DNA of 64,000 nt from Botryllus schlosseri (lineage: Eukaryota). Positions 17,222 to 48,234 of this stretch are shown piece by piece. Under the pieces are notes generated by a model that worked only from the letters and a program-made list of their open reading frames with translations, was not told where the DNA came from and did not search any database. The position numbers were made by a program, and so were the translations under genes. The stretch lies in contig CM119383.1 in the NCBI GenBank assembly GCA_051294905.1, positions 9,920,001 to 9,984,000 of the forward strand. Reading direction: 5' to 3'. Each line of letters opens with the position of its first letter. Position 1 is the stretch's first letter.

Positions 17222-20200
17222 CTATTCGTCTTTCTGTTTATCATCGCCAGCAGTCAATGAGGCAGTTTGTGTTTCGTCTGTAGTAGAGCTGCCAGATTCG
17301 CGTGTTGTGCTTTGCACAATCTCGGGTATGGCTGCCGGAGACATTTTCGAGGCTATGTTGTCATCAGCACCAGTCTGCGCGATACAACTGCGCGCATTCA
17401 CGCTGCCACTACACTCCTCCGAACTGTCGAGAAGTTGCTGCGAGGTCTCGTTGTTCAGAGTGTCTTTGCCACCGGCGTCCTGAAAGGCATAGAAGTCCTG
17501 AAATCAGTGGTTCTCAAAACGGTTTGATTCCGAATTGATGAAGGTTCTATGGGTTATACTTTTCAAAGTACTGTCACAAACTAATAGTTCCCATAAACCA
17601 TATCACATTCATATGTCAGATGTATCATGTTACATTGGCGGAATCGGTTTATAGAACAAGCCACTGCCATTTTTGGTTGATTTTGGATGTGTGACCTAGT
17701 GTCACTCGGCCTTAGGTGAAAATCGGTGTTACACGTGGCAGGATTACAGAAAATCTACAATACCATCATTTACCTCATTCTCCGTTCCCGCCAACAACTT
17801 CTCTACAATACTCGTGACGTGCTCCGCATGCTCCAGACTCTCCTTCAAGTCCGCCACTTCGTTTCGAAGTTCGGCAATGACTTTGTCTTTTTTCTCATGC
17901 TCCTCGTGCAACTGACCAAAAAATTCAAAAGTTACTTCCAGTTTGCGACCAACATCGCGATAAGAAAGGCTTCTTCCTTGACAGGTAGAAATATAGAGAA
18001 CCGAGAAGTAGCGTATGCAATATTGACGCCTATCACACAAGCCCCTATCCCTTCTGCATCTACTGATCAGGGTTGTGACCAAGTCGCAAGGTTCCGAGCC
18101 GCAAGTCAATTTCACTATTATAATTTTGTTAGAATCACGTAGAGTCATTTTCAATCCACCGCCAGGTCCAAGTCAGTAAGCAGACGGTCCAGTCCCAAGT
18201 CAAAGTGTCGCGACTCGAGTCCTAGTCATTGTTTTCGTTGATCAGTTTTTAGTTCAAGTCATGTTCGACCCACTTTTTCCAACTCTACTTGGGCGACATT
18301 CACATTCATTTTACAATAATTTTGCTCCCTCTCTGCAGTGTCCTAATTTTCAAGCAAAGTACTGATAGACAATATACCAATAATTTGGTAACTTTACTAT
18401 TCTTTGAAGTTACAATGAGCACCTGTCTTGGCCGTCCTAGTCTCGAGTCATGCGCGATGACTCGAGTATGCGGAGACAATACACAAATTGACTCGAGTAC
18501 ACTATTTTTAGTGTTTGAAAAAATGACTCGAGCAAGTCTAGTCACAAAATGATCTCGACTCCAGTCATTAGAACCCTGGTCCTGATCCTATAGCTTGCGA
18601 GATAAGCTTTCATAACAATAAATAATGGAAAATACAAATGTACGAGGACAGCTTTCCAAGTTGCGATTTCACACGTCTCGGACAACGCTTTGAAATTGCG
18701 GTAGCCTGGCCTATACCGTACCTTTTTATTCTGTTTCAGAGCCACAGCGAGGCCTTTTCGTCTCTCTTCGGCCAGCAGTTCCCAGTACCTCTCCGTAGGT
18801 TGACCGTTGCGAATCATATGGTAGTCTTCGCTGTTCAGCGCATCCTACATTCAAAACGATTAAAGGAAAAGGCATGGTAACAAAACATCCCTACATTAGG
18901 CTGCGAAAGTTGTAAGAACTCGAAAAAGGATTCCGGTTGCAAATTTTTCACAGCGGACACACTAGATCCCAGGGACCCAAGTATAGAGCTTCCAGCTGTT
19001 GCCCAGATATCAGATGAATCACTTCTCAAATATCTGTGAAAATCTACATACATACTTGGGGTACGTGGAGGGGTTAGATCGGTCTCACTATCATATCACA
19101 TTATATGTGTAAACTGTACAAATGGTGTAAGAGTCTGGTTGGCTCTGGGGTATGACGACTGAGTGGGTCATTGCAGTGTGTAATTAAAATAGGCTGCGTT
19201 ATTTTCTGAGCCCGTTACAAATATAGCATCAATTACCTGATAGATTTTACTTTTAGAATTGCCATGAGCAGACGGTTTGCCGCCTGATTTCTTCTTACTT
19301 TTAAAATTTTCTTTGTCGCCACTGTGAATTGAATTGAAAAAAATTAGATTTCTAGTAAATATGGACGAGCCATAAATGTGGGCGGGAGTGCACACATTGC
19401 ACAGTGCAGTAGGTGCCAAAGACCTAGCCAGATTGGTCGGAAGATTGTTATTGTCGGCATTCAAAAAGTAGATCACGTCCTGTCCGAGTGTTACAACCCC
19501 CGATGCAGTCAATGCGGAAGGATGTAAAATATTGATTCAAAACTACACCGACAGGGTGCTAAAAGTCTCTAGATGCAACAATTGCACACTAACTATAGGT
19601 AATATGACGTTGAAAACTGCATCACTCCATCCTAGACACAGCAAGTTGAAATTAGAAGTGTCCTTGCTTGAAAATTCACAAGAGGGAAGAAGAACTCTGC
19701 AACTATAGCCACTTATAAATTCAGGTTGCTAACTGAACCGTCACACAATTGATATAAAATGCAGGCTCACGTACGCTCCTGGTTTTGAGCTGGCAGGCAC
19801 GGAGAAGAGCGACTCCGTTTTTAAATTCTCTGGCTGAAAAGTGCCGATTGTTTTTCGTTTTGGAACATTGTCGACCGACGACTGTGTGAGACCGAGCTTC
19901 TTCGATGCGACATGTTGCTAAAATGAATCAAGATAAATATGCAAGCGATGGCCTAAATAACAAATTAGATAATTTCAATTGACCGTTATCAAGTAACTAT
20001 AGGTGGGTGAAGTATGAAATGGAATCCGACATTGCGAAAATGGAGACATATCACTACTGCCAACAATTTGCACACGCAATTAAAACAGTCTAATATGGTA
20101 GCCTACATAAGATTTGACGTATTCATAAGCGATAGACAATTAAAGGAAAACCAATTTGTCACTGTGTCAGGACCACAATGTTTAATTGATCAATTGATAA

Positions 20201-22482: not shown

Positions 22483-24117
22483 ATGGACCGAGAGGAAGAG
22501 GTGGAAGATATTTCGGAGGAAGATGACCACCAAGAAGGTGAAGATGGTGACACAGACCTTTCAATGGTCCTCGCTCTTCTCATCGGAAGTGGTCAGTTGC
22601 GATTAGCCTCCAATCAAAGCTTCCTTAGAAGAGTTGTTCTGGATGAAGAATCGGACGAAGACGATGCTGCAGCAATTGATGAAAACTTACAAGTCCCTGA
22701 CACCATCCAAGACAGCGCCTTAATGCAGGATGTACTACTCTCCTCTGGTAACATTACACATCCCGGTTCTACTGTTGATCATAGCGTTTCCAGAATGTTG
22801 AGAGCCCGCGAAATTGGCTGCTGTGGATGGGGACGGAAAGGCTTCTTAACACCCGGGTTAAAAGCTGTTGTGTGTAACGACAAGTTACCGTTGGAAGTCA
22901 TGAAGACGTTTGTGCTTCCAGAGAAACTGTTTTGTGGTATATTTTCTGAAGACGGTAATACTTTCCTGTCCGCATGTCAGGACGGATATATCCGTGTATA
23001 CGACACAAGCTCGTTTGATTTTTCCAAAAAATCTATGCCTTTTAAGAGAATACCTGCGATTGATGTCGGGTGGAGCATTTTGGATGTGGCGTTCAGTCCG
23101 GACTCCTATTACGCAGCGTATTCCACATGGTCTAATCACATTCACATTTCTTCTATCTATGACAATGAAGATGAAAATTTATCGTCACACATTGCCTTGG
23201 ATTTGGAGCCTGGCAACCACAGCTTTGCCGTGTTTTCGTTACAGTTTTCCGGGGACAACAGAGAAATCTTGTGCGGTGCGAATGACGGCGATCTGTATAT
23301 CTACGACAGAAATCTTGGCAAGAGAACATCCCGTATCAATGCTCATGAAGATGATGTCAATGCGATTCGTTTCGCTGATCCTTCCTCTCAAATATTGTAC
23401 TCCGGCGGTGATGATGGTCTTATCAATGTCTGGGATCGGAGAATGCTGCACGAAAGTAATTCGCAACGAGTCGGATGTTTTGCGGGTCATCTCGATGGAA
23501 TAACGTTCATCGATTCGAAGGAAGATTCTCGATATCTGCTTTCGAACAGTAAAGATCAATGCGTTAAGATGTGGGACATGCGTAACTTTTCATCGGCCGA
23601 GGCGCAAAACGCTGTCAAAGATGTAGTTTCAAGACAGGCTTGGGATTACAGGTGGCAAGTGCTGCCAAGACGGCAACAGCGTCGTAAAAAGACTGTACCC
23701 GGCGATACATCTATAAAAACATATCAAGGGCATGTCGTATCACGAACATTAATACGGGCTCGTTTCTCTCCATTGCACTCCACCGGCCAGAGATACATTT
23801 ATTGCGGTAGCTCAGACGGGAAGGTGGTGATATATGATATTATTACAGGCGATATAGTGTCTGGCGGCCCGAAGCACCAGGAGTGTGTCAGGGATGTGTC
23901 GTGGCATCCTTATGAGCCAATGATTGTTTCGAGCTCTTGGGACAGGTCTCACAAAGTATGGGGACATATTCTATTCGAAGATGATCATGATCAAATCACG
24001 GATAGGTCTAGTAGGAAAAGAATTCGTTCAGGAGAAGCTGGTGGTCGCCAGCCTTACAAATACAGCTCCACAACACGGCGCAGCCCAAGACTAGCTGCCC
24101 GTGAAAGTAATCGTTGA
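22483..24117 (+). CDS. DCAF11: DDB1- and CUL4-associated factor 11 (WDR23), WD40 substrate receptor, single coding exon, 544 aa
   Basis: Uninterrupted ORF. N-terminal DLSMVLALLIGSGQLRL, DVGWSILDVAFSPD, AHEDDVNAIRFAD, FAGHLDGITFIDSKEDSRYLLSNSKDQCVKMWDMR, WDYRWQ and YQGHVVSRTLIRARFSP are characteristic of the DCAF11/LEC14B family. Confidence 0.95.
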   Translation: MDREEEVEDISEEDDHQEGEDGDTDLSMVLALLIGSGQLRLASNQSFLRRVVLDEESDEDDAAAIDENLQVPDTIQDSALMQDVLLSSGNITHPGSTVDHSVSRMLRAREIGCCGWGRKGFLTPGLKAVVCNDKLPLEVMKTFVLPEKLFCGIFSEDGNTFLSACQDGYIRVYDTSSFDFSKKSMPFKRIPAIDVGWSILDVAFSPDSYYAAYSTWSNHIHISSIYDNEDENLSSHIALDLEPGNHSFAVFSLQFSGDNREILCGANDGDLYIYDRNLGKRTSRINAHEDDVNAIRFADPSSQILYSGGDDGLINVWDRRMLHESNSQRVGCFAGHLDGITFIDSKEDSRYLLSNSKDQCVKMWDMRNFSSAEAQNAVKDVVSRQAWDYRWQVLPRRQQRRKKTVPGDTSIKTYQGHVVSRTLIRARFSPLHSTGQRYIYCGSSDGKVVIYDIITGDIVSGGPKHQECVRDVSWHPYEPMIVSSSWDRSHKVWGHILFEDDHDQITDRSSRKRIRSGEAGGRQPYKYSSTTRRSPRLAARESNR

Positions 24118-26476: not shown

Positions 26477-27071
26477 GCTATGCATTGATTTTAAATTCTG
26501 CTCTATTCTGTTTGCTAGCCTATGCAGCAACAATAACGTCTGAACTCGCTGCGGCTGCACATGCTAACCAAGTTTTCTTTTGCAACCTGGTATACTGGAT
26601 ATAGACAGAAAAATTTATTGGAGCGCGTGGCAAAACATTACAAATGGCGATAAGTGACAATCGGTTTCTTAGGGTAGAGTTTTACATCAGAGCGTACAGA
26701 TGCAATACACATAACATCATTCGTGTACTGGATATGATGCAAAAAGAATAAACCCGAGATAAACGAAAGGTACTGATATTTAGATTTCATCAAGTACTCC
26801 AGAACGTCCTTCACAGGTTCATGACGAAACGGAACCTGTGATTGGGGCATTGGTGGGATTGTTTTGTTCAATAGTGCTCGCAGCAGTCTCATAACGCTGA
26901 ATTCTCCCGAACTTTAATATCCCGAAGCAAATATGAGTCGATTGGATATGAAATCCAGTTGTATCCTGCCGACAACGACGTATAGACAGCAGATTCCTGC
27001 ACGGCAAATGTTTGAGCTCCAACAGCAACTTTTTCCAGTACCAGCACACGACCGCGACGACCTTAGCGAAG

Positions 27072-27383
27072 GGCCCTGTGGATATAAAGCTGTATCAGCT
27101 GTATCAGCTGTATCAGCTGTATCAGCTGTATCAGCTGTATCAGCTGTATCAGCTGTATCAGCTGTATCAGCTGTATCACCCTGTGGATATAAAGCTGTAT
27201 CAGCTGTATCAGCTGTATCAGCTGTGTCAGCTGTATCAGCTGTATCAGCTGTATCACCCTGTGGATATAAAGCTGTATCAGCTGTATCAGCTGTATCACC
27301 CTGTGGATATAAAGCTGTATCAGCTGTATCACCCTGTGGATATAAAGCTGTATCAGCTGTATCACCCTGTATCAGCTGTATCA
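27072..27383 (+). repeat. Left foldback arm: 15-bp unit CCCTGTGGATATAAA followed by (GCTGTATCA)n, n = 10, 7, 3, 2, 2, plus a hybrid unit
   Basis: Parsed directly from the sequence; one variant unit GCTGTGTCA. Confidence 0.95.
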
Positions 27384-27743
27384 CGTCTATACTATGTCTG
27401 GGATGCGCGAAATAGTCTAGTAGTCTATCACACATTTAGTGAATCAGCTCTTCTTGCGTAAACGCGCGAAGCAAAAGAAATTTATATATTTCATGATTGA
27501 GTCGGTCAATATATGATCGCGAATTGCATATAGATTGCTATCAATTTTTTCCTCTCTCTACTCACGTAATCTGATTTACGCTACCGACCGGTAGAGCTGA
27601 GTGAGTGTGTTTGAAAAGGTATAAGGACCCCTCGTATAATAATTAATTAAACATCTCCGGGTTTATACCCGTTGGCAGGAACGAAAAAGCACTTCGTCAG
27701 GCTCCCCAAAAAAACTTGAGTCTTGGGCTCCTAGGGTCATAAA

Positions 27744-28035
27744 CAGAGGTGATCATGATCAGCAACGAAGTACTTCTACTTTTTCGAAGTACTCAAGTAG
27801 TTTTCCTCTACTTCTGGCACTTACTCAAGTAGATCTGATTTTCTCTACTTCTACTTCGTAATATTTTGTGATTTACTTACTTATTTTTCGCTATTTTCAG
27901 TTTGTCAAGTAGAAGTAGTTCAATCCTCCAAGCAGGAAGATAGCCTGAGCAATTTCGGGCTGTTTCACGGAGTATCAACATTTAATTTTCATAAAAGTTG
28001 AGTAAAGCCCAGAATTTTCGTCGCGCTTCGCGCGC
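27744..28035 (+). mobile_element. Left-end fragment of the CAGAGGTGG hAT family inside the foldback
   Basis: Highly similar to 46930-47220 (ACGAAGTACTTCTACTTTTTCGAAGTACTCAAGTAG..CATAAAAGTTGAGTAAAGCCCAGAATTTTCGTC). Confidence 0.85.
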
Positions 28036-28330
28036 AGTGTGTCAGGATTGTCCAGCCACGAGTCCATCGCACCAGAATAGCCTATGCATCGTGTAGTCAT
28101 TATTTAAAACCTGCGTTACCATTCATGAAAATAAGTTATAATCAAGCTTGTTGGCACGTAGGCCTATACCGTGATGTATGGAATGTGCACTGTGCAGTGA
28201 TGTATTCATATACTAATAATTGATAGACAAAGTTCCCAGACGAGGAGCTCTCTTCATGACATACCAATCGAATTACCGCCCCCTCCTTCTGGTGCACTAG
28301 TATCATAATATTGTCGTCATGGCGTAAGTC

Positions 28331-29499
28331 CAGGGCCGTAACGGCACTTCTTCACCCCCCCAACAAAGTTGGCCTTGGGCCTCTCATAGGGTGATATACC
28401 GAACTTCTGGGGGGCTTCGCCGGTAATTGAATATATATTGTTATCAATTTTTATCCTCTCTCTACCCACGTAATCAGATTTATCGGTAGAGCTGAGTGAG
28501 GTGTGTTTGAAATGGTAGGACCCTTCAATAATAATTAAACATCTTCGGGCGTATACCCGCGTTCGCAGGAACGAAGCAGCACTTGGCCAGGCCCCCAATA
28601 AAACTAGGGTCTTGGGCTCCCATAGAGTGATAAAAACGACCCCACCCCATCACGTTGTTCGCATTTGTCACGAAATAATTAGGGCAACAGTTTAGCGCGA
28701 AGCGCGAAAATTTTCGATAATTCATGATAAAATCGGTCAATAATATCGGGAATTGCATATATATTGCTATCAATTTCTTGTCCTCTATGTTCAGTTGTTC
28801 ACGTTATCAGATTTACCAGTAGAGCTGAATGAGGTGGCTTGGAAACTGTAGGGCCCGTAAATGATAATTGAACATATTCGGGCGGGCGGACCCGTTCGTA
28901 TGACTTCGTTTCATGATGTCCTTTCGTGACCTCGTGTCTGCTATATCAAAATATATAGAATCGCCCAAACGTAGGCTACTAAAGTAAAAGACGCACACGA
29001 TTTCAAATTGGTATATCTTCACTGGCATATAATTTTTCCCTGTGGAATGGTATTTGTCTTCTGAGGTACAGATTGCCAAGGCAGGAACATTCAGCGCCAG
29101 TCATTTAGGCGCCTATGGACAATTCAACCTATAGCTATGTATTTCGCATATACACCGAAGTTTTCGGTCAGCGTAAGAGGGCAGTCCTTTTTGGCCCAGG
29201 TTTTCTCGCTGCCGATCGTTCTGGTACACTTCTTGGAGTCGCGTCCTAAAACTTTAAATGTCTCGCCGATATGTCCATTTCGATAAAGTTTGCGTATTTT
29301 GTCTTGGGGTAGAGTACCAAATCATTAAGAAACTTGGCAACTTGAAATCGCGCCCAGCGCGAAAAATTTTTGAAAAAGTTGCATAAATTTTCAAAAAATA
29401 CTTTATAATTTATGCTAATTCGCGAAATAATTTTGGGCCGCCTTCGAGCTCGCCCCCCCCCCCAATTGGGGGGTTTGAGGTGAGGCAGTTACGGTCCTG
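28331..29499. mobile_element. hAT (Tip100-like end) non-autonomous element nested in the foldback
   Basis: TIRs CAGGGCCGTA / TACGGTCCTG; perfect 8-bp TSD CGTAAGTC; internal degenerate ~320-bp tandem units. Confidence 0.88.
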
Positions 29500-30001
29500 C
29501 GTAAGTCCTACATTATGTTAATTAGATAACACTAGACTAGACGCGTCTAGACTATATGAGCCTCCAGATACTACACCTCTACCTAATACACTCCTGCAGT
29601 CACAGACGTCCAGGCCCACGTAGGCCCACGAGTGCATACACGGCTCTTTGCCCTCTTGTTTCAAGAAATCGAAAGTGTCATCGGAGGACGCCCAAGTGTG
29701 CTCTTTTTCGTACCTCAAAATATGGTAACCCTAGGCTAGACACCAACGAATATTTATTCGCAACAGAGTTTCTCGCAAGCAGAGCTTTTAACACAAAGTA
29801 ACGAAATTTCATTTGATCCCGGCCAAGATGTCAGAATATCTGTGTCACGCTGGTAGGCTACACTAGAAACCATGAATTGTCATTACATTCATTGTGATGA
29901 ATGCTGCCAATGGAGAATGGACACACTCTGCCTTTCTCCACGTCGTCGGGGGTTCTCAACTTGCCTGATATAACGGGCCGCAGATCTATATTAATATGTA
30001 T

Positions 30002-30450
30002 CAGTGTTGGGTAAGTCACTACCTTCGAGTCACGAGTCATTTCGCATTTTGACTCGAGTCAAGTCAAGTCAATCGATTTTCGAAGGTGACTCGAGTCAAG
30101 TCAAGTCACTCGATTTTTGGAGGTGACTCGAGTCAAGTCGAGTCAAGTCAAGTCAAGTCAAGTCACGAGTCAAGTCACAATTCAAGTCAAGTTGCTTTTT
30201 CGAAGTACGAGGTATGATTACGTCATTGCATTTTGCTGCCTGTCTGCAATACAGATTGAGTGGTCATTGATTCTGAACCGATGAACGAACATTTTGCTAT
30301 CAAATTATACTTTACTATAATCTAGTTTACGACAAAGTAAACTGTAAGCTTCGATCATTTCGTTTGCGGTCAATTTATTTGTGAGAGAACAATGGAGGCT
30401 CAGTAAATCGCACGATCATTGAATCATTGGTCGCTCACACGGGTCATACC
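30002..30450 (-). mobile_element. Truncated, internally deleted copy of the 39025-40409 family inside the foldback
   Basis: CAGTGTTGGGTAAGTCACTACCTTCGAGTCACGAGTC matches the reverse complement of 40375-40409; 30320-30430 matches the reverse complement of ~39260-39365. Confidence 0.8.
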
Positions 30451-30854
30451 AGCGTTTCGCGAACAATCCAAACATATGCAAGATACAGTTGACCATTTGT
30501 ATCCACACCGATAACCGATATGCACATGCGCAGATCGTGTGTATGTGTATCGAGTCGGTGTATATGCCGCAAAAGCATCAAGGACAAAAATAAACTACGT
30601 CCTTTCCTTTTTTTATCTATCCATTATATGTTGTCTGTAAAAGCTGTAAAGGAGGACGGATTGCCTAATAGGGGGACAATTAGGCGTTCTCGGAGGATCC
30701 CTGGTCCAAAGGATCCGTGGAGCTGATATCTGCGCACCATAAGAGGCCGGGTTTGGTCAGAGAGACAGACGGAGTCTTTATTTCTTCATCCAACTGAAAT
30801 ACAAACAAACAGACGGCAATAATGGTGGTAGGGTATTCGGTACCAGATAGGGAA

Positions 30855-31085
30855 ATCCACAGGGTGATACAGCTGATACAGCTTTATATCCACAGGGTGA
30901 TACAGCTGATACAGCTGATACAGCTTTATATCCACAGGGTGATACAGCTGATACAGCTTTATATCCACAGGGTGATACAGCTGATACAGCTGATACAGCT
31001 TTATATCCACAGGGTGATACAGCTGATACAGCTGATACAGCTGATACAGCTGATACAGCTGATACAGCTTTATATCCACAGGGCC
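30855..31085 (-). repeat. Right foldback arm: same modules, n = 6, 3, 2, 3, 2 counted from the outer end
   Basis: Parsed directly from the sequence (TGATACAGC units separated by TTTATATCCACAGGG). Confidence 0.95.
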
Positions 31086-31219
31086 TTAGCGAAGCGATGC
31101 TATCAGACAAAATAACGTTTGGGTCGTTTGCCGCCAGGTGGCTATGGCTATTTACCATTGAGACGTTTTGAATAGAGTTACCACCATATATAAAATTAAT
31201 CCCTGAACGCTAGGTAAAT

Positions 31220-31794
31220 CAGGGTTTTAACCAAGTCACAAAGCTACGAGTCACAAGTCAATCTCACTTTTATAGTTTTGACTCGAGTCAAGTCGAGTCA
31301 TTTTCAATTCACCACTAAGGGCGGAGCTCAATTTCTCTGCTGAGTAGCGATTCTCTACTCAGCAACGATTTCGTAACTCAAGTCGTAACGTAAGTCGAGT
31401 CCGAGTCATCGAGCAGATGTTCGAGTCCGAGTCATGGTATTATGACTCGAGTCAGTGTTGCTGACTGCTCTGTTTCCAGTTAAAGTCTTGCTAAACCCAC
31501 TTTTATAACTCTGTTTGGTGATATCGAATGATTCGCATTTATAATATACTAAGTATCCTCACCTTTAACAGTTTCTGGTCGCATTTTCAAGTACCAGTAC
31601 CAATAGTCGAAATGCCAATAGGGTGGTTACTTGACTGTGCTTCGAAATTACAATGAAATGTCGGTCTTGGCCGTCTGAGTCTCGAGTCATATGACTTGGT
31701 TCAAGACATGGGCGATGACTCGAGTCCAAGTCGAGTCATAGCACAGATTGACTCGAGTCATCAGTAAATCGTGACTCGAGTCATTACAGCCCTG
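31220..31794. mobile_element. GACTCGAGTC-rich hAT MITE (575 bp)
   Basis: Ends CAGGGTTTTAA / TTACAGCCCTG; perfect 8-bp TSD AGGTAAAT. Confidence 0.9.
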
Positions 31795-34356: not shown

Positions 34357-34959
34357 ATGGCGCCTGTAAACGACGATGACCGCACCTTGTGGGTGGGGAA
34401 TTTGGATAGCCAAGTCACCGAGGAGATTCTCTGGGAATTATTTTTGCAAGCGGGCCCGTTAGAGTCGGTGAAAATACCGAAAGATCACAAAACCGGCAAA
34501 TTGAAAAACTTTGCCTTTGTGGTATTCCGGCATCAGGTGTCTGTCGGCTATGTGATAGACTTGATGGACCAAATAAGATTGTACGATTCACCGTTGAGGT
34601 TATCTCGGAAGAATAAGCCCGCCGGCGATAACGCCGCAAATGTAAACGAACATAATCCGATGCAGCACCAAAATGCAGGCATGGACCAATTCAGGACTGA
34701 CTCTCCTATACCGCCACCCCACCATCCTCTGATGCATATGATGCCAGCATTTAATGGGATGATGCCACATCACATGATGATGCCGCATTGTCCAGAGGAT
34801 CCGCGTCCGCCTCTACCGCCCCACTGGGAAGAAAATCAACACCCGCGCCATCCAGGATGGCAACAGCATCAAATGCGCAGAAGTTATTCAACCCCGCATC
34901 GTTTGCATGAGGAAAGTCACAGGCATGATCCGTACAGGCGTAGCCGCCACCGGAGATAG
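34357..34959 (+). CDS. RBM7: RNA-binding protein 7 (RBM7/RBM11 family; NEXT complex RRM), single coding exon, 200 aa
   Basis: N-terminal RRM DRTLWVGNLDSQVTEEILWELFLQAGPLESVKIPKD..KNFAFVVFRHQVSV matches RBM7/11; Pro/His/Arg-rich tail. Confidence 0.85.
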   Translation: MAPVNDDDRTLWVGNLDSQVTEEILWELFLQAGPLESVKIPKDHKTGKLKNFAFVVFRHQVSVGYVIDLMDQIRLYDSPLRLSRKNKPAGDNAANVNEHNPMQHQNAGMDQFRTDSPIPPPHHPLMHMMPAFNGMMPHHMMMPHCPEDPRPPLPPHWEENQHPRHPGWQQHQMRRSYSTPHRLHEESHRHDPYRRSRHRR

Positions 34960-39024: not shown

Positions 39025-40409
39025 CAGTGTTGGGATGACTCGAGTCATGACTTGACTCGAGTCAGACTCGAGTCACCTTTTTCGCATGACTTGACTTGAC
39101 TCGAGTCACTTTGCAAAAATGACTTGACTTGACTTGACTCGACGCTTCAGAAATGCAGATTGACTCGTGACTCGAAGCAAAATTTACGAGTCAATTTCAA
39201 GTCATCAAGTAATCGATGTCGACTAAATCGCCGTATCTTGTATAAGTTTGGATTTTTATCCGATCACTCAATGATTGTGCCTTTTACCGAGCCTCCATTG
39301 TTACATCACCAATGAATAGATCGTTAACGCAGTGATCGGAGCTTATAGCTTACGTTGTCGTAAACTTGCTCACCTCAACCAACCCTCTTGTGTGCTTTAA
39401 ATCGAACGGATATCGTCCATACGTTTGTAATGGTAGGTATGCCATAAATATATATGTGGGTAGGGTACTATTGCTCCATATCATTTTTTGAACTTTCTGA
39501 TGTTTCATATGTTATCCTATATTTTGGCCGATAATTATAGATCAGCGGTGGGCAGAGCGGCTTCACGTGCGAGTCGCATATCAAAAATCGTTGCCTTAAA
39601 AGAGTCACAACCCAAAAATTGATAGGTATATACTAATTTATTCCGTCACGAGGAAATGTAGGGTATCGAATGAAGTATATTATTGAGTGGTATAATACGA
39701 TGCGTCTCCGCCTTGGCGGAAGGTGTTTGCAATCGGGCTGATAAGACGTCTAACAGTCCGGAGCTCGGTAATCATAATACTTCGTAAATAAGTCTTTATT
39801 GGGTAACTCGTGGCAATTAGGGTTTTGGTGTTTGGTTTCGTAATGCCGTTTCAATTCTAGTTATGTGATTATTGGGCGAATATTGACGGAAAAGGCACAG
39901 TGGCTTACGTTCATTATCACCGAATGCACATTGCACACTCGTTGAACAGCCGCAATCAAAGGCTCAAAGAGTAGCATGCGGCTCGCGAGTCGCAGTTTTC
40001 CACCCCTGTTATAGAATGAGGCTATACTGCTATACTTGCGTAGTTTGACAGTTCTACGTATGTATGAGCGATAAGCGCCTTCTTGCGTGTACATTGTATT
40101 ATCAACTCTTGATTCGTTCTTCAATTCAGATTAAATGGGGACTCCATCTGTATTTAAAACAGTTAGCATGATGTAATGACTTTGAATCATGTCTTGTACT
40201 TTGAAAATTCAACTTGACTCGAATAGTGACTTGACTCGTGACTTGACTTGACTTGACTCGACTTGACTCGAGTCATCTCCAAAAATCGAGTGACTTGACT
40301 TGACTCGAGTCACCTTTAAAAATCGAGTGACTTGACTTGACTCGAGTCAAAATCTGCAATGACTCGAGATGACTCGTGACTCGAAGGTAGTGACTTGATC
40401 CCAACACTG
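39025..40409. mobile_element. hAT non-autonomous element with GACTCGAGTC/GACTT subterminal arrays
   Basis: TIRs CAGTGTTGGGAT / ATCCCAACACTG; perfect 8-bp TSD CTTTTTAT. Confidence 0.93.
39543..40008. mobile_element. Charlie-type MITE nested in 39025-40409
   Basis: Ends CAGCGGTGGGCA / TTCCACCCCTG; TSD ttatagat / ttatagaa (7/8). Confidence 0.8.
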
Positions 40410-40985: not shown

Positions 40986-42212
40986 TCAAACTTTTGTAGT
41001 GGAGATTAGAGAAGTAGATGACAAAGCAGGGGCGAGAGTGGAATTGTTCACTTGCCCCCCACCAGACAGATCAATAGATTCAAAGAAATAAAGCCTAAAA
41101 CTAAGGGAGAATGCCACATGGGCTAAAATCACAAAAGCGAGAATGATCAATCTGGATTTTTTCGACCCATCACGCATTAGCGGCCACAGACTGATGGCCA
41201 CAACTGCGCCAGACAAAGCAGCAGCTACAATCACAAGGATCCAATCGACGGTACCGCTCGGAATCAGAAGAAGGAAAGATATGGGGATGTATACAAATAA
41301 AGAGTATCCGTAGAGGCAAACGATATCTAAATACCCAGACGACGATTCAAGTTTAGCAAAGAAAAAAGCACCTCTAACAAGCAGCGGCATGAAAAAGGCG
41401 TAACTATACACGATCGTAACAGCGATTACAAGTCTATGAAACTCTGGAGAGTAATGGTAGTCAGGGTCATCCAAGTGATTGAATAATTTTGTCAAGTTGC
41501 CGCATATTCCTATAGTTATGACGAGAGTTGCACATATCCAGAAGGGTCCGTACAAATCAGGATGACCACCGATATAATTTCTTGTGAACTCGGCATTCGG
41601 TTTCGGCAGCAATGAACCTTTGACGCGACTCAACACGACATACGAGTCCACGTTGAACAGCTCCTTGTAAAATTCGAACTTCCAAACAGACGGTGACTTC
41701 TTCTCCAGCAGGCCCGAAGAATCGCTGGTATCTGGCTCTTCCTCATCTACGGCGGATATTGGAAAATTTGAGAATGTGTGGGTTTTTCCGTCATCATTCT
41801 CTTGTTCGATGTCGACGCGAACTGAAATTTCGAGCAAATACGGTCATCATTGGATTGAGCTCATCATGTAGTGTGATGAATTGCTTTGACCCCATTAAGG
41901 CATTCAAAGAAAGCATGAATACAGAATATCCACAATTATTTGCATATCATGAGATTTCTATTTGACTATTTCACATTGCAGGATAGCAATTCATAGTTTT
42001 TCGATACAAAACACCTCTCCGTGGACCAACTTATATGCTTAGCTGAAGCAGACGCTTCGAAAGATTTATTTGTATATGAAAGATTCCACAAATCCAAGCA
42101 CAAGTCATGCTATCGTGGCTGGCATGACTACTAACGTACCTTCATTGTGGCCTTGGTCTGTTTTTGCAGGTTTATCCCAAATATTGAACTCATCAGAGTC
42201 GTTTGACGCCAT
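40986..42212 (-). CDS. YIPF1: Yip1-domain family member 1/2 (Golgi membrane protein)
   Basis: Exon 42212-42140 (MASNDSDEFNIWD..) splices in phase 1 to 41821-40986 (TGA). Family motifs WKFEFYKELFNVD..RVKGSLLP, PDLYGPFWICATLV and CLYGYSLFVYIPIS, with multiple TM segments. Confidence 0.92.
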
Positions 42213-46929: not shown

Positions 46930-48234
46930 CAGAGGTGGTCAGTGACGAAGTACTTCTACTTTTTCGAAGTACTCAAGTAGTTTTCCTCTACTTCTCGTAC
47001 TTACTCAAGTGGATTTGATTTTCGCTACTTCTACTTCTACTTCGTAATATTTTGTGATCTACTTACTTCTTTTTCGCCATTTTCAGTTTGTCAAGTAGAA
47101 GTAGTTTAATCCTCCAATTAGTAAGATAGCCTGAGGAATTCCGGGGCTGTTTTCACGAAGTATCAACATTTAATTTTCATAAAAGTTGAGTAAAGCCCAG
47201 AATTTTCGTCGTGCTCCGCGCTCAGTGGATACGGAGTAGCCAGTATGACTCACGAAAGTATATAATATATAATTTATATAATATTGGTAGCGGGTTATCG
47301 TGGTTCCGTTCAGACCGCATTATCGCCGTTCGCCCATATGAAATATTTCATCACAGTATATATATGGCTCATTATAACGTTTGAAACTGATGTTTCGCAA
47401 TCTAGCATTTACTTATCATATCGTAATATCAGTCCATATTGTGTCATGATCTGGAAAAGTGGACTCTGACTTTTTTTTAAGTTCTAGAGCTGTTTTAGCA
47501 TACCACCTTTGAAACTTTCAGGACTATAGACACGAAATACATTTTCCGCTTTTAGAAGTAGTGATTATATTTCAATTTCAATTCCCAGTGTCATATAGAT
47601 TGAGTTCTAATTGATATCAGCTCTTTTGTCTGGGTAACATATGCATGTTGAAGTATAAAAGCAAGTGTAGTAATGCCTTTAATTTTCGGAAATTAAGCTT
47701 GTCAATATGGCATTTTTACGATCCACCATATTTTTTATTAACCTTTAATAATCGCGCAAAGTGTTTACACCGTATCCTATTCAACTTCTCCGTATTGCTC
47801 TTCGACTGAAATAGGGGCCTTACAATATGGGGAGTGCGACATACCATGATATTTTCTAAAAAGTGATGCTCAAGTAAACAGAGGATTAGTATAGCATTTC
47901 CATATCAATACTTTCATTTTCATCTCCTGATGCGGACGAATGCTTATGCTGTCGAAAATTGGATACCTCCTGGTATGCATCAATAAGAATGAAGCTCGAC
48001 ACCTTTCGCATACCTTAATTTGCAGCTTTTGACAATCCATGCGAACGAATTACGATCGTTTTCACAATTACTTACTTACTTAAGTAGATTTAAACTCAGC
48101 CAATACTACTTCTACTTCAAGTAGTTTTAGATTGCTTGTGGAAGAAGTACTTCTACTCGTACTTAAGTAGATTTTTTTCGTCGCTACTTCTACTTCTACT
48201 TGAGTAGCTTTCTTGACTACTTTGACCACCTCTG
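46930..48234. mobile_element. hAT non-autonomous element, TACTT-rich (reference copy of the most abundant family in the window)
   Basis: TIRs CAGAGGTGGTCA / TGACCACCTCTG; TSD attaatat / attagtat (7/8). A possible decayed dimerization motif (Y*CIPG..FSTA) lies on minus at ~47940-48010. Confidence 0.88.

What the first reader, a model, noticed from the sequence alone, without database searches (positions are those of the whole stretch)
27063..31094. Intact 4-kb Foldback-like transposon with modular TIRs and a perfect 9-bp TSD
Seen: what looks like two satellite patches 3.5 kb apart is one element. The arms are inverted, both start GGCCCTGTGG, and the element is flanked by TTAGCGAAG on both sides. 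Known: long TIRs made of tandem repeats define foldback elements (Drosophila FB with a 9-bp TSD, sea-urchin TU elements, foldback-type MULEs), and a 9-bp TSD points to the Mutator superfamily, unlike the 8-bp hAT elements that dominate this window. Inference: near-perfect units and an intact TSD imply recent insertion, possibly by an undescribed family whose autonomous partner is elsewhere.
Basis: partly seen in the sequence, partly recalled or inferred. Interest (0 to 1): 0.8.

Follow-up and report, generated by a model that had tools for sequence, protein, structure and literature searches.

The report
Non-autonomous foldback-type DNA transposon
This is a real 4-kb cut-and-paste jumping gene with no enzyme gene of its own, whose two inverted ends are built from short tandem repeats; the kind is well known in flies, mosquitoes and nematodes and seems common in this genome, so it is a tidy but ordinary example.

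Summary
Window 27072-31085 (4014 bp) is bounded by identical inverted termini (GGCCCTGTGGATATAAAG). It is flanked by the 9-bp direct repeat TTAGCGAAG (27063-27071 and 31086-31094), which occurs nowhere else in the 64 kb.

The arms are 312 and 231 nt. Both follow one plan: GG, then five modules made of a 15-nt copy of the terminus followed by 2-10 copies of the 9-mer GCTGTATCA.

The 3.5-kb interior has no ORF with any Pfam match. It is a patchwork of fragments of other repeats, so the element is non-autonomous.

Animal Mutator-type foldback elements match this anatomy: Aedes Muta1-14, nematode Tm1, Drosophila FB and Tetris, and Rehavkus. In Muta1, more subterminal repeats were shown to raise transposase binding and excision.

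Merlin elements also make 8-9-bp duplications and always begin with GG. My odds are Mutator about 0.6 and Merlin about 0.3.

No other copy, autonomous partner or empty site could be reached with the tools available. Earlier notes of this scan report many foldback-type elements of several superfamilies elsewhere in this genome. Verdict: a new member of a known kind, of low interest.

The parts
27063..27071 (.). Left target-site duplication, TTAGCGAAG
   Evidence: one of only two occurrences in the window. It abuts the left terminus.
27072..27383 (+). Left arm (312 nt): GG, then modules T-u10, T-u7, T-u3, T-u2, T-u2, then a truncated T plus one u. T = CCCTGTGGATATAAA and u = GCTGTATCA.
   Evidence: module parse; repeat finders. 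One unit differs (GCTGTGTCA, 27224-27232).
27072..27089 (+). Left terminal motif GGCCCTGTGGATATAAAG. This is the presumed cleavage and transposase-recognition end. Inside the arms it recurs with CA in place of GG.
   Evidence: two exact terminal copies and eight internal copies with the same 2 mismatches.
27384..30854 (.). Non-coding interior (3471 bp), a mosaic of fragments of other repeats plus sequence unique in the window
   Evidence: BLAST against the window; none of the stop-to-stop segments of 45 aa or more that were scanned (30 of 31) has a Pfam match better than E = 0.05; no RNA family above chance and no tRNA.
27464..28903 (+). Three degenerate copies (about 77-82% identical) of a 210-330-bp unit at 27464-27743, 28425-28634 and 28695-28903. 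They are not seen elsewhere in the window.
   Evidence: (families D7-D19).
27756..28039 (+). Fragment of a dispersed repeat, 90% identical to window 46936-47227
30002..30430 (+). One-ended fragment of the hAT-like MITE family whose complete copy lies at 39025-40409. It keeps the terminus CAGTGTTGGG but has no second terminus.
30855..31085 (-). Right arm (231 nt), read on the minus strand: GG, then T-u6, T-u3, T-u2, T-u3, T-u2, then a truncated T
31086..31094 (.). Right target-site duplication, TTAGCGAAG

Best explanation
A non-autonomous, foldback-type ('type 2 foldback') cut-and-paste DNA transposon, most likely of the Mutator superfamily (MULE / Rehavkus / FB-NOF branch). It inserted between host genes and duplicated 9 bp of target. 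Shown: the two identical termini, the 9-bp duplication, the modular tandem-repeat arms and the absence of any gene. Inferred by analogy with the Aedes MULE Muta1: a transposase made by an autonomous relative elsewhere binds the terminal motif together with the reiterated subterminal units. It cuts both ends through a DDE-catalysed double-strand break that leaves hairpins on the flanking DNA, and it joins the freed 3'-OH ends to target strands staggered by 9 bp. The many repeats act as extra binding sites that raise excision frequency. The internal copies of the terminal motif carry CA instead of GG, so they probably bind but are not cut. The heterogeneous interior is either acquired genomic DNA or the residue of nested insertions and deletions.
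For: No coding capacity. The literature matches point by point. [quoted passage not shown] Their non-autonomous derivatives have variable, asymmetric repeat numbers and heterogeneous interiors, and the Muta1 terminus is GGGTCTACCC (PMC5225508; PMC5499845). More repeats gave stronger transposase binding and more excision. Tm1 of root-knot nematodes has composite TIRs of 13-15-bp tandem repeats, 9-bp TSDs and a Mutator/Phantom transposase (PMC3169594). Rehavkus has a 9-bp TSD, long TIRs and subterminal tandem repeats (PMC6446971; bioRxiv 2024.12.02.626372). Most foldback elements are assigned to Mutator (PMC4079207). As unverified leads, earlier notes report Rehavkus/NOF-type autonomous foldback elements in this same genome.
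Against: No transposase, and not even a remnant, links this element to any superfamily. No second copy was available, so TSD length rests on a single insertion. GG termini with an 8-9-bp TSD fit Merlin equally well. Earlier notes, also unverified, report foldback-like Merlin, P and Zisupton elements in this genome, so the architecture is not diagnostic here. The terminal motif is not the palindromic kind seen in Muta1.
Confidence: 0.58

Rival explanations
1. A non-autonomous Merlin-superfamily element with foldback-like, repeat-filled arms, mobilised in trans by an IS1595/Merlin-type DDE transposase.
For: Merlin TIRs start with a conserved GG, TSDs are 8 or 9 bp, TIRs reach 462 bp, and many families carry tandem repeats (PMC8101967). 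The element starts with GG and has a 9-bp TSD. As unverified leads, earlier notes report abundant Merlin elements and one foldback-like Merlin in this genome.
Against: In the families newly described in that paper, 8 bp is the commoner Merlin TSD. If the 10- or 11-nt reading of the direct repeat were right, it would fall outside the Merlin range. Arms made of short 9-15-bp subterminal repeats are documented for animal MULEs, whereas the Merlin repeats described there are longer (52 and 163 bp). No IS1595-type domain is present in the interior.
Confidence: 0.28
2. A foldback-type derivative of another or an undescribed TIR superfamily; foldback architecture has evolved convergently, as in Galileo of the P superfamily.
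For: Foldback structure arose independently in several lineages (PMC4079207; PMC3688188, listed). As unverified leads, earlier notes list P-, Zisupton- and Merlin-type foldback elements in this genome.
Against: By established knowledge of superfamily TSD lengths, a 9-bp TSD excludes hAT (8), P/Galileo (7-8), Zisupton (8), piggyBac, Tc1/mariner, PIF, CACTA and Transib. A GG terminus is not the hAT or P type.
Confidence: 0.1
3. Not a mobile element: two inverted satellite patches arranged by chance, by an inverted duplication, or by an assembly artefact.
For: Only one copy was seen, and no read-level data were available.
Against: Both termini are identical to the base and are abutted by the same 9-mer (p about 4e-6). 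The motif and the 9-mer unit occur nowhere else in 64 kb. Palindromic artefacts invert whole reads rather than 230-310-nt arms around 3.5 kb of unique DNA.
Confidence: 0.03

Closest known systems
Non-autonomous Muta1-type MULEs of Aedes aegypti (type 2 foldback elements; PMC5225508, PMC5499845)
   Same: 8-9-bp TSD and a G-rich terminus. The TIRs exceed 100 bp and are made of a terminal motif plus 9-15-bp subterminal tandem repeats. The two ends carry unequal repeat numbers, and the interior is heterogeneous and non-coding.
   Different: Here the terminal motif itself recurs five times per arm, giving a higher-order module of T plus n units, whereas Muta1 has a single terminal motif followed by repeats. 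The terminus is not palindromic. The arms are longer (231 and 312 nt against 145 nt). The host is reportedly an ascidian, and the transposase link is untested.
Tm1 Mutator/Foldback family of root-knot nematodes (PMC3169594)
   Same: Composite TIRs of variable length built of short (13-15 bp) tandem repeats. TSDs are 9 bp with no target consensus. MITE-like members have no coding capacity.
   Different: Tm1 has asymmetric 7-bp outer motifs, whereas here both termini are identical. There is no sequence similarity.
Drosophila Foldback (FB) and Tetris (PMC4079207); sea-urchin TU elements
   Same: Long inverted arms made of tandem repeats, a variable non-coding middle domain, and 8-10-bp TSDs. Tetris likewise has no known transposase.
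   Different: Those arms are usually much longer (up to kilobases) with longer repeat units (for example 220 bp in Tetris). Here the units are 9 nt and the arms 0.2-0.3 kb.
Rehavkus (Mutator-related; PMC6446971, bioRxiv 2024.12.02.626372)
   Same: [quoted passage not shown]
   Different: Rehavkus is defined by a PHD-finger transposase, and nothing coding is present here. The published host range is arthropods and annelids.
Merlin superfamily (PMC8101967)
   Same: GG termini, an 8-9-bp TSD, and tandem repeats inside many families.
   Different: Merlin membership is defined by a DDE_Tnp_IS1595 transposase, which is absent here. Arms built of 9-nt units are not described there.

Membership tests
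Foldback-type elements (structural class) | Long terminal inverted repeats composed of tandem subrepeats | tested here: met
   arms of 312 and 231 nt, each with five T+u(n) modules; 226 of 228 aligned columns identical.
Foldback-type elements (structural class) | Variable middle domain with little or no coding capacity | tested here: met
   a mosaic interior with no Pfam match.
Foldback-type elements (structural class) | Target-site duplication showing transposition | tested here: met
   a perfect 9-bp TTAGCGAAG on both sides.
Foldback-type elements (structural class) | Multiple dispersed copies in the genome | not testable with these tools
   Only this 64-kb window is readable. There is no second copy in it, and none in the metagenome or viral collections.
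Mutator superfamily (MULE / Rehavkus / FB-NOF) | TSD of 8-11 bp, typically 9 | tested here: met
   9 bp, and 9-11 under any reading.
Mutator superfamily (MULE / Rehavkus / FB-NOF) | Long TIRs, in animals often with short subterminal tandem repeats | tested here: met
   compared with PMC5225508.
Mutator superfamily (MULE / Rehavkus / FB-NOF) | MULE-type DDE transposase (plus a PHD finger for Rehavkus), in the element or in an autonomous partner sharing its termini | not testable with these tools
   None is inside the element. The partner would have to be found elsewhere in the genome, which cannot be searched here.
Merlin superfamily | TIRs beginning with GG and a TSD of 8-9 bp | tested here: met
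   against the criteria in PMC8101967.
Merlin superfamily | DDE_Tnp_IS1595 transposase, in the element or in an autonomous partner | not testable with these tools
   Absent from the interior. The partner is unreachable.
hAT superfamily | 8-bp TSD and termini of the YARNG type | tested here: not met
   The TSD is 9 bp and the terminus GGCCC. For contrast, the hAT-like MITE at 39025-40409 has CAGTG termini and an 8-bp TSD.
P superfamily (Galileo-type foldback) | 7-8-bp TSD | tested here: not met
   9-bp TSD.

The most novel reading that the evidence does not exclude
The element represents an undescribed foldback family, or a lineage outside Mutator and Merlin, in which the cleavage-end motif itself is reiterated five times per arm as a higher-order repeat. 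This would give nested, potentially alternative ends whose use is switched off by a two-base change (GG to CA). Its partner transposase would be of a type not yet linked to foldback architecture.
Probability: 0.07. Interest if true: 0.5.

Novelty: new member of a known kind. Interest (0 to 1): 0.2.

Why it matters
It matters little beyond annotation. It is a clean example of a short-unit foldback element, showing how transposon ends seed tandem arrays that are possible proto-satellites. It is also a possible marker of recent DNA-transposon activity in this genome. Two features may be useful. The strict grammar of the arms could serve as a search key to collect the whole family. The contrast between GG at the ends and CA at the internal copies of the terminal motif gives a simple testable prediction about which bases the transposase needs in order to cut rather than only bind.

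Tried and rejected
1. **Other copies in the window.** I looked for other copies and for an empty paralogous site. The motif, the 9-mer unit and the TSD occur only here, and the immediate flanks are unique.

2. **Public collections.** Exact scans with the terminal 30-mer and the 24-mer module found nothing in metagenome contigs or viral contigs.

3. **Sister copies through called ORFs.** The arms are open in four frames, so I searched one arm translation (GPVDIKLYQ...) against the protein database. There were 2484 word candidates and none was significant. I ran no further search on the other frames.

4. **Coding remnants.** I scanned nine ORFs and 30 of the 31 stop-to-stop segments of 45 aa or more against Pfam. 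Only chance-level hits appeared, at E of 0.05 or worse.

5. **RNA genes.** Rfam gave only a low-complexity artefact (isrG, 33 bits against a 100-bit threshold) on the arms. There are no tRNAs.

6. **Earlier notes of the scan.** Sequence and word look-ups found no note on this family.

7. **Rejected readings.** I rejected a chance repeat, an assembly palindrome, and hAT, P or Zisupton membership on TSD length.

8. **Host identity.** I checked it only loosely: a Yip1 ORF is nearest to chordate clusters. 'Ascidian' comes from earlier notes.
Full report
**Observation**

- TTAGCGAAG occurs twice in the 64-kb window, at 27063-27071 and 31086-31094.
- GGCCCTGTGG begins at 27072, and its reverse complement ends at 31085.
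- The element is therefore 27072-31085, which is 4014 bp.
- The 18-nt terminus GGCCCTGTGGATATAAAG is identical at both ends. Allowing 3 mismatches it has 10 matches, all inside the two arms, against 0.03 expected.
- The chance that the two 9-mers abutting the termini agree is 4^-9 = 3.8e-6.
- One nuance: the direct repeat can be read as 11 nt (CC+TTAGCGAAG), because the element's last two bases equal the two bases left of the left duplication. Only the 9-bp reading keeps the two termini symmetric. All readings (9-11) lie in the Mutator range, and only 9 lies in the Merlin range.
- The window has no N runs.

**Anatomy of the arms**

I parsed the arms into T = CCCTGTGGATATAAA and u = GCTGTATCA.
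- Left arm: GG, T-u10, T-u7, T-u3, T-u2, T-u2, then a truncated T and one more u (27072-27383, 312 nt).
- Right arm, read inward: GG, T-u6, T-u3, T-u2, T-u3, T-u2, then a truncated T (31085-30855, 231 nt).

Each arm thus carries five full copies of the sequence that also forms the terminus. The internal copies are preceded by CA instead of GG. The two arms differ only in whole 9-nt units and one A>G change, and 226 of 228 alignable columns are identical.

TRF and the repeat finder report the same arrays, with periods of 9, 24, 33, 42 and 75/78. Junctions between u units create CAGCTG palindromes, so a single arm also folds on itself (DNA MFE -65.6 kcal/mol, z = -8). The two arms can pair with each other. 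The name 'foldback-like with modular TIRs' is accurate.

**Interior**

The 3471 bp between the arms contain no ORF above 110 aa other than read-through of the arm repeats. Nine ORFs and 30 of the 31 stop-to-stop segments of 45 aa or more gave no Pfam match better than E = 0.05. There is no MULE, PHD, Ulp1 or IS1595-type domain. Rfam and ARAGORN give nothing real.

BLAST against the window and pairwise alignments show a mosaic:
- 27756-28039 is 90% identical to 46936-47227.
- 30002-30430 is a one-ended fragment of a hAT-like MITE family.
- 30519-30609 is 94% identical to 43672-43580.
- Three degenerate copies (about 77-82% identical) of a 210-330-bp unit lie at 27464-27743, 28425-28634 and 28695-28903.

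A complete copy of the hAT-like MITE, 39025-40409, has CAGTGTTGGG termini and an 8-bp TSD, CTTTTTAT.

The element is therefore non-autonomous. Its cargo looks like ordinary repeat-rich DNA, either acquired between the ends or left by nested insertions and deletions.

**Context**

The flanks are unique within the window. The element lies between a WD40 ORF (22483-24117, + strand) and an RRM ORF (34357-34959, + strand). A Yip1 ORF lies at 40986-41837, - strand. No transposase ORF of 110 aa or more is present in the window.

The Yip1 ORF is nearest to chordate clusters. Earlier notes of this scan call the genome an ascidian, and I did not verify this further.

**What it is and how it most likely works**

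The structure proves a TIR cut-and-paste insertion. The closest functional model is the Aedes aegypti MULE Muta1 and its relatives.
- All 14 Aedes MULE families have 8-9-bp TSDs.
- Their non-autonomous derivatives keep only the ends, have unequal repeat numbers at the two ends (for example 3 and 7) and have heterogeneous interiors.
- The Muta1 terminus is GGGTCTACCC (PMC5225508; PMC5499845).
- In vitro and in yeast, the terminal motif plus one repeat suffices for transposition, and more repeats strengthen transposase binding and raise excision.
- Cleavage proceeds through a hairpin on the flanking DNA.

Other described elements show the same plan:
- Tm1 of root-knot nematodes has composite TIRs of 13-15-bp repeats, 9-bp TSDs and a Mutator/Phantom transposase (PMC3169594).
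- Tetris is a foldback element with 8-10-bp TSDs and no known transposase (PMC4079207).
- Rehavkus has a 9-bp TSD and long TIRs with subterminal tandem repeats (PMC6446971; bioRxiv 2024.12.02.626372).

By analogy, which is inference and not shown here, a transposase supplied in trans binds the T and u sites, cuts at the GG ends and integrates with a 9-bp stagger. The internal T copies, which have CA in place of GG, would bind the transposase without being cut.

**Superfamily**

Merlin elements have 8- or 9-bp TSDs, TIRs of up to 462 bp that always begin with GG, and frequent tandem repeats (PMC8101967). Foldback architecture is convergent. Earlier unverified notes list Mutator/Rehavkus-, Merlin-, P- and Zisupton-type foldback elements in this same genome.

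I weighed three things: 9 bp is the typical length for Mutator (and established knowledge) and the less common one for Merlin, short-unit arms are documented for animal MULEs, and GG termini are universal in Merlin. This gives Mutator about 0.6, Merlin about 0.3, another superfamily about 0.1 and an artefact about 0.03. hAT and P fail on TSD length and termini.

**Age**

The arms deviate from their own grammar by one substitution in 543 nt, and the TSD is 9/9. Dispersed repeats in the same window are only 77-94% identical to each other. A recent insertion is the simplest reading. Array slippage and arm-to-arm conversion could also keep the arms uniform, so the age is not calibrated.

**What could not be done**

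No tool here reads the rest of this genome, Dfam or Repbase. Exact scans of metagenome and viral contigs found nothing. A search with an arm translation found nothing either. Copy number, the TSD spectrum, the autonomous partner and the empty site therefore remain open.

**Verdict**

This is a real, structurally complete, non-autonomous foldback-type DNA transposon. It is a new member of a known kind, in a genome where the scan has already noted many foldback elements on other DNA. Interest is low. The only mildly unusual trait is the fivefold reiteration of the terminal motif within each arm.

Noticed in passing
window 39025-40409: A complete 1385-bp hAT-like MITE with CAGTGTTGGG / CCCAACACTG termini and a perfect 8-bp TSD, CTTTTTAT. 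It carries the 37-bp and AGTCA-type internal tandem repeats that also appear at 30050-30192.
   Followed up: partly
window 30002-30430: A one-ended, internally deleted fragment of that hAT-like family sits inside the foldback element. It keeps the left terminus and has no right terminus, so the cargo contains truncated transposon pieces rather than clean nested insertions.
   Followed up: partly
window 27464-27743, 28425-28634, 28695-28903: Three degenerate copies (about 77-82% identical) of a 210-330-bp unit inside the element, with no match elsewhere in the window. They could be the family's own internal repeat or an unrelated SINE- or MITE-like sequence.
   Followed up: no
window 31218-31740: About 130 bp to the right of the element, another dispersed repeat begins. 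It matches 60127-59704 (77-90%) and 18066-18498, and it shares the GACTCGAGTCAAGTC motif with the hAT-like MITE family.
   Followed up: no
window 22483-24117 (+), 34357-34959 (+), 40986-41837 (-): Host-gene ORFs: an uninterrupted 544-aa WD40-repeat ORF, an RRM-domain ORF and a Yip1-domain ORF. The foldback element lies in the 10-kb gap between the first two.
   Followed up: partly
window 27096-27293: A spurious Rfam hit (bacterial isrG sRNA, 33 bits against a 100-bit threshold, E = 3e-6) caused by the tandem 9-mers. It shows that the E-value is misleading on such repeats.
   Followed up: yes
window 27061-27071 and 31084-31094: The direct repeat reads as 11 nt (CCTTAGCGAAG) if the element's terminal CC is counted. 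This is probably a 1-in-16 coincidence, but it should be kept in mind when TSD lengths are tabulated for the family.
   Followed up: yes
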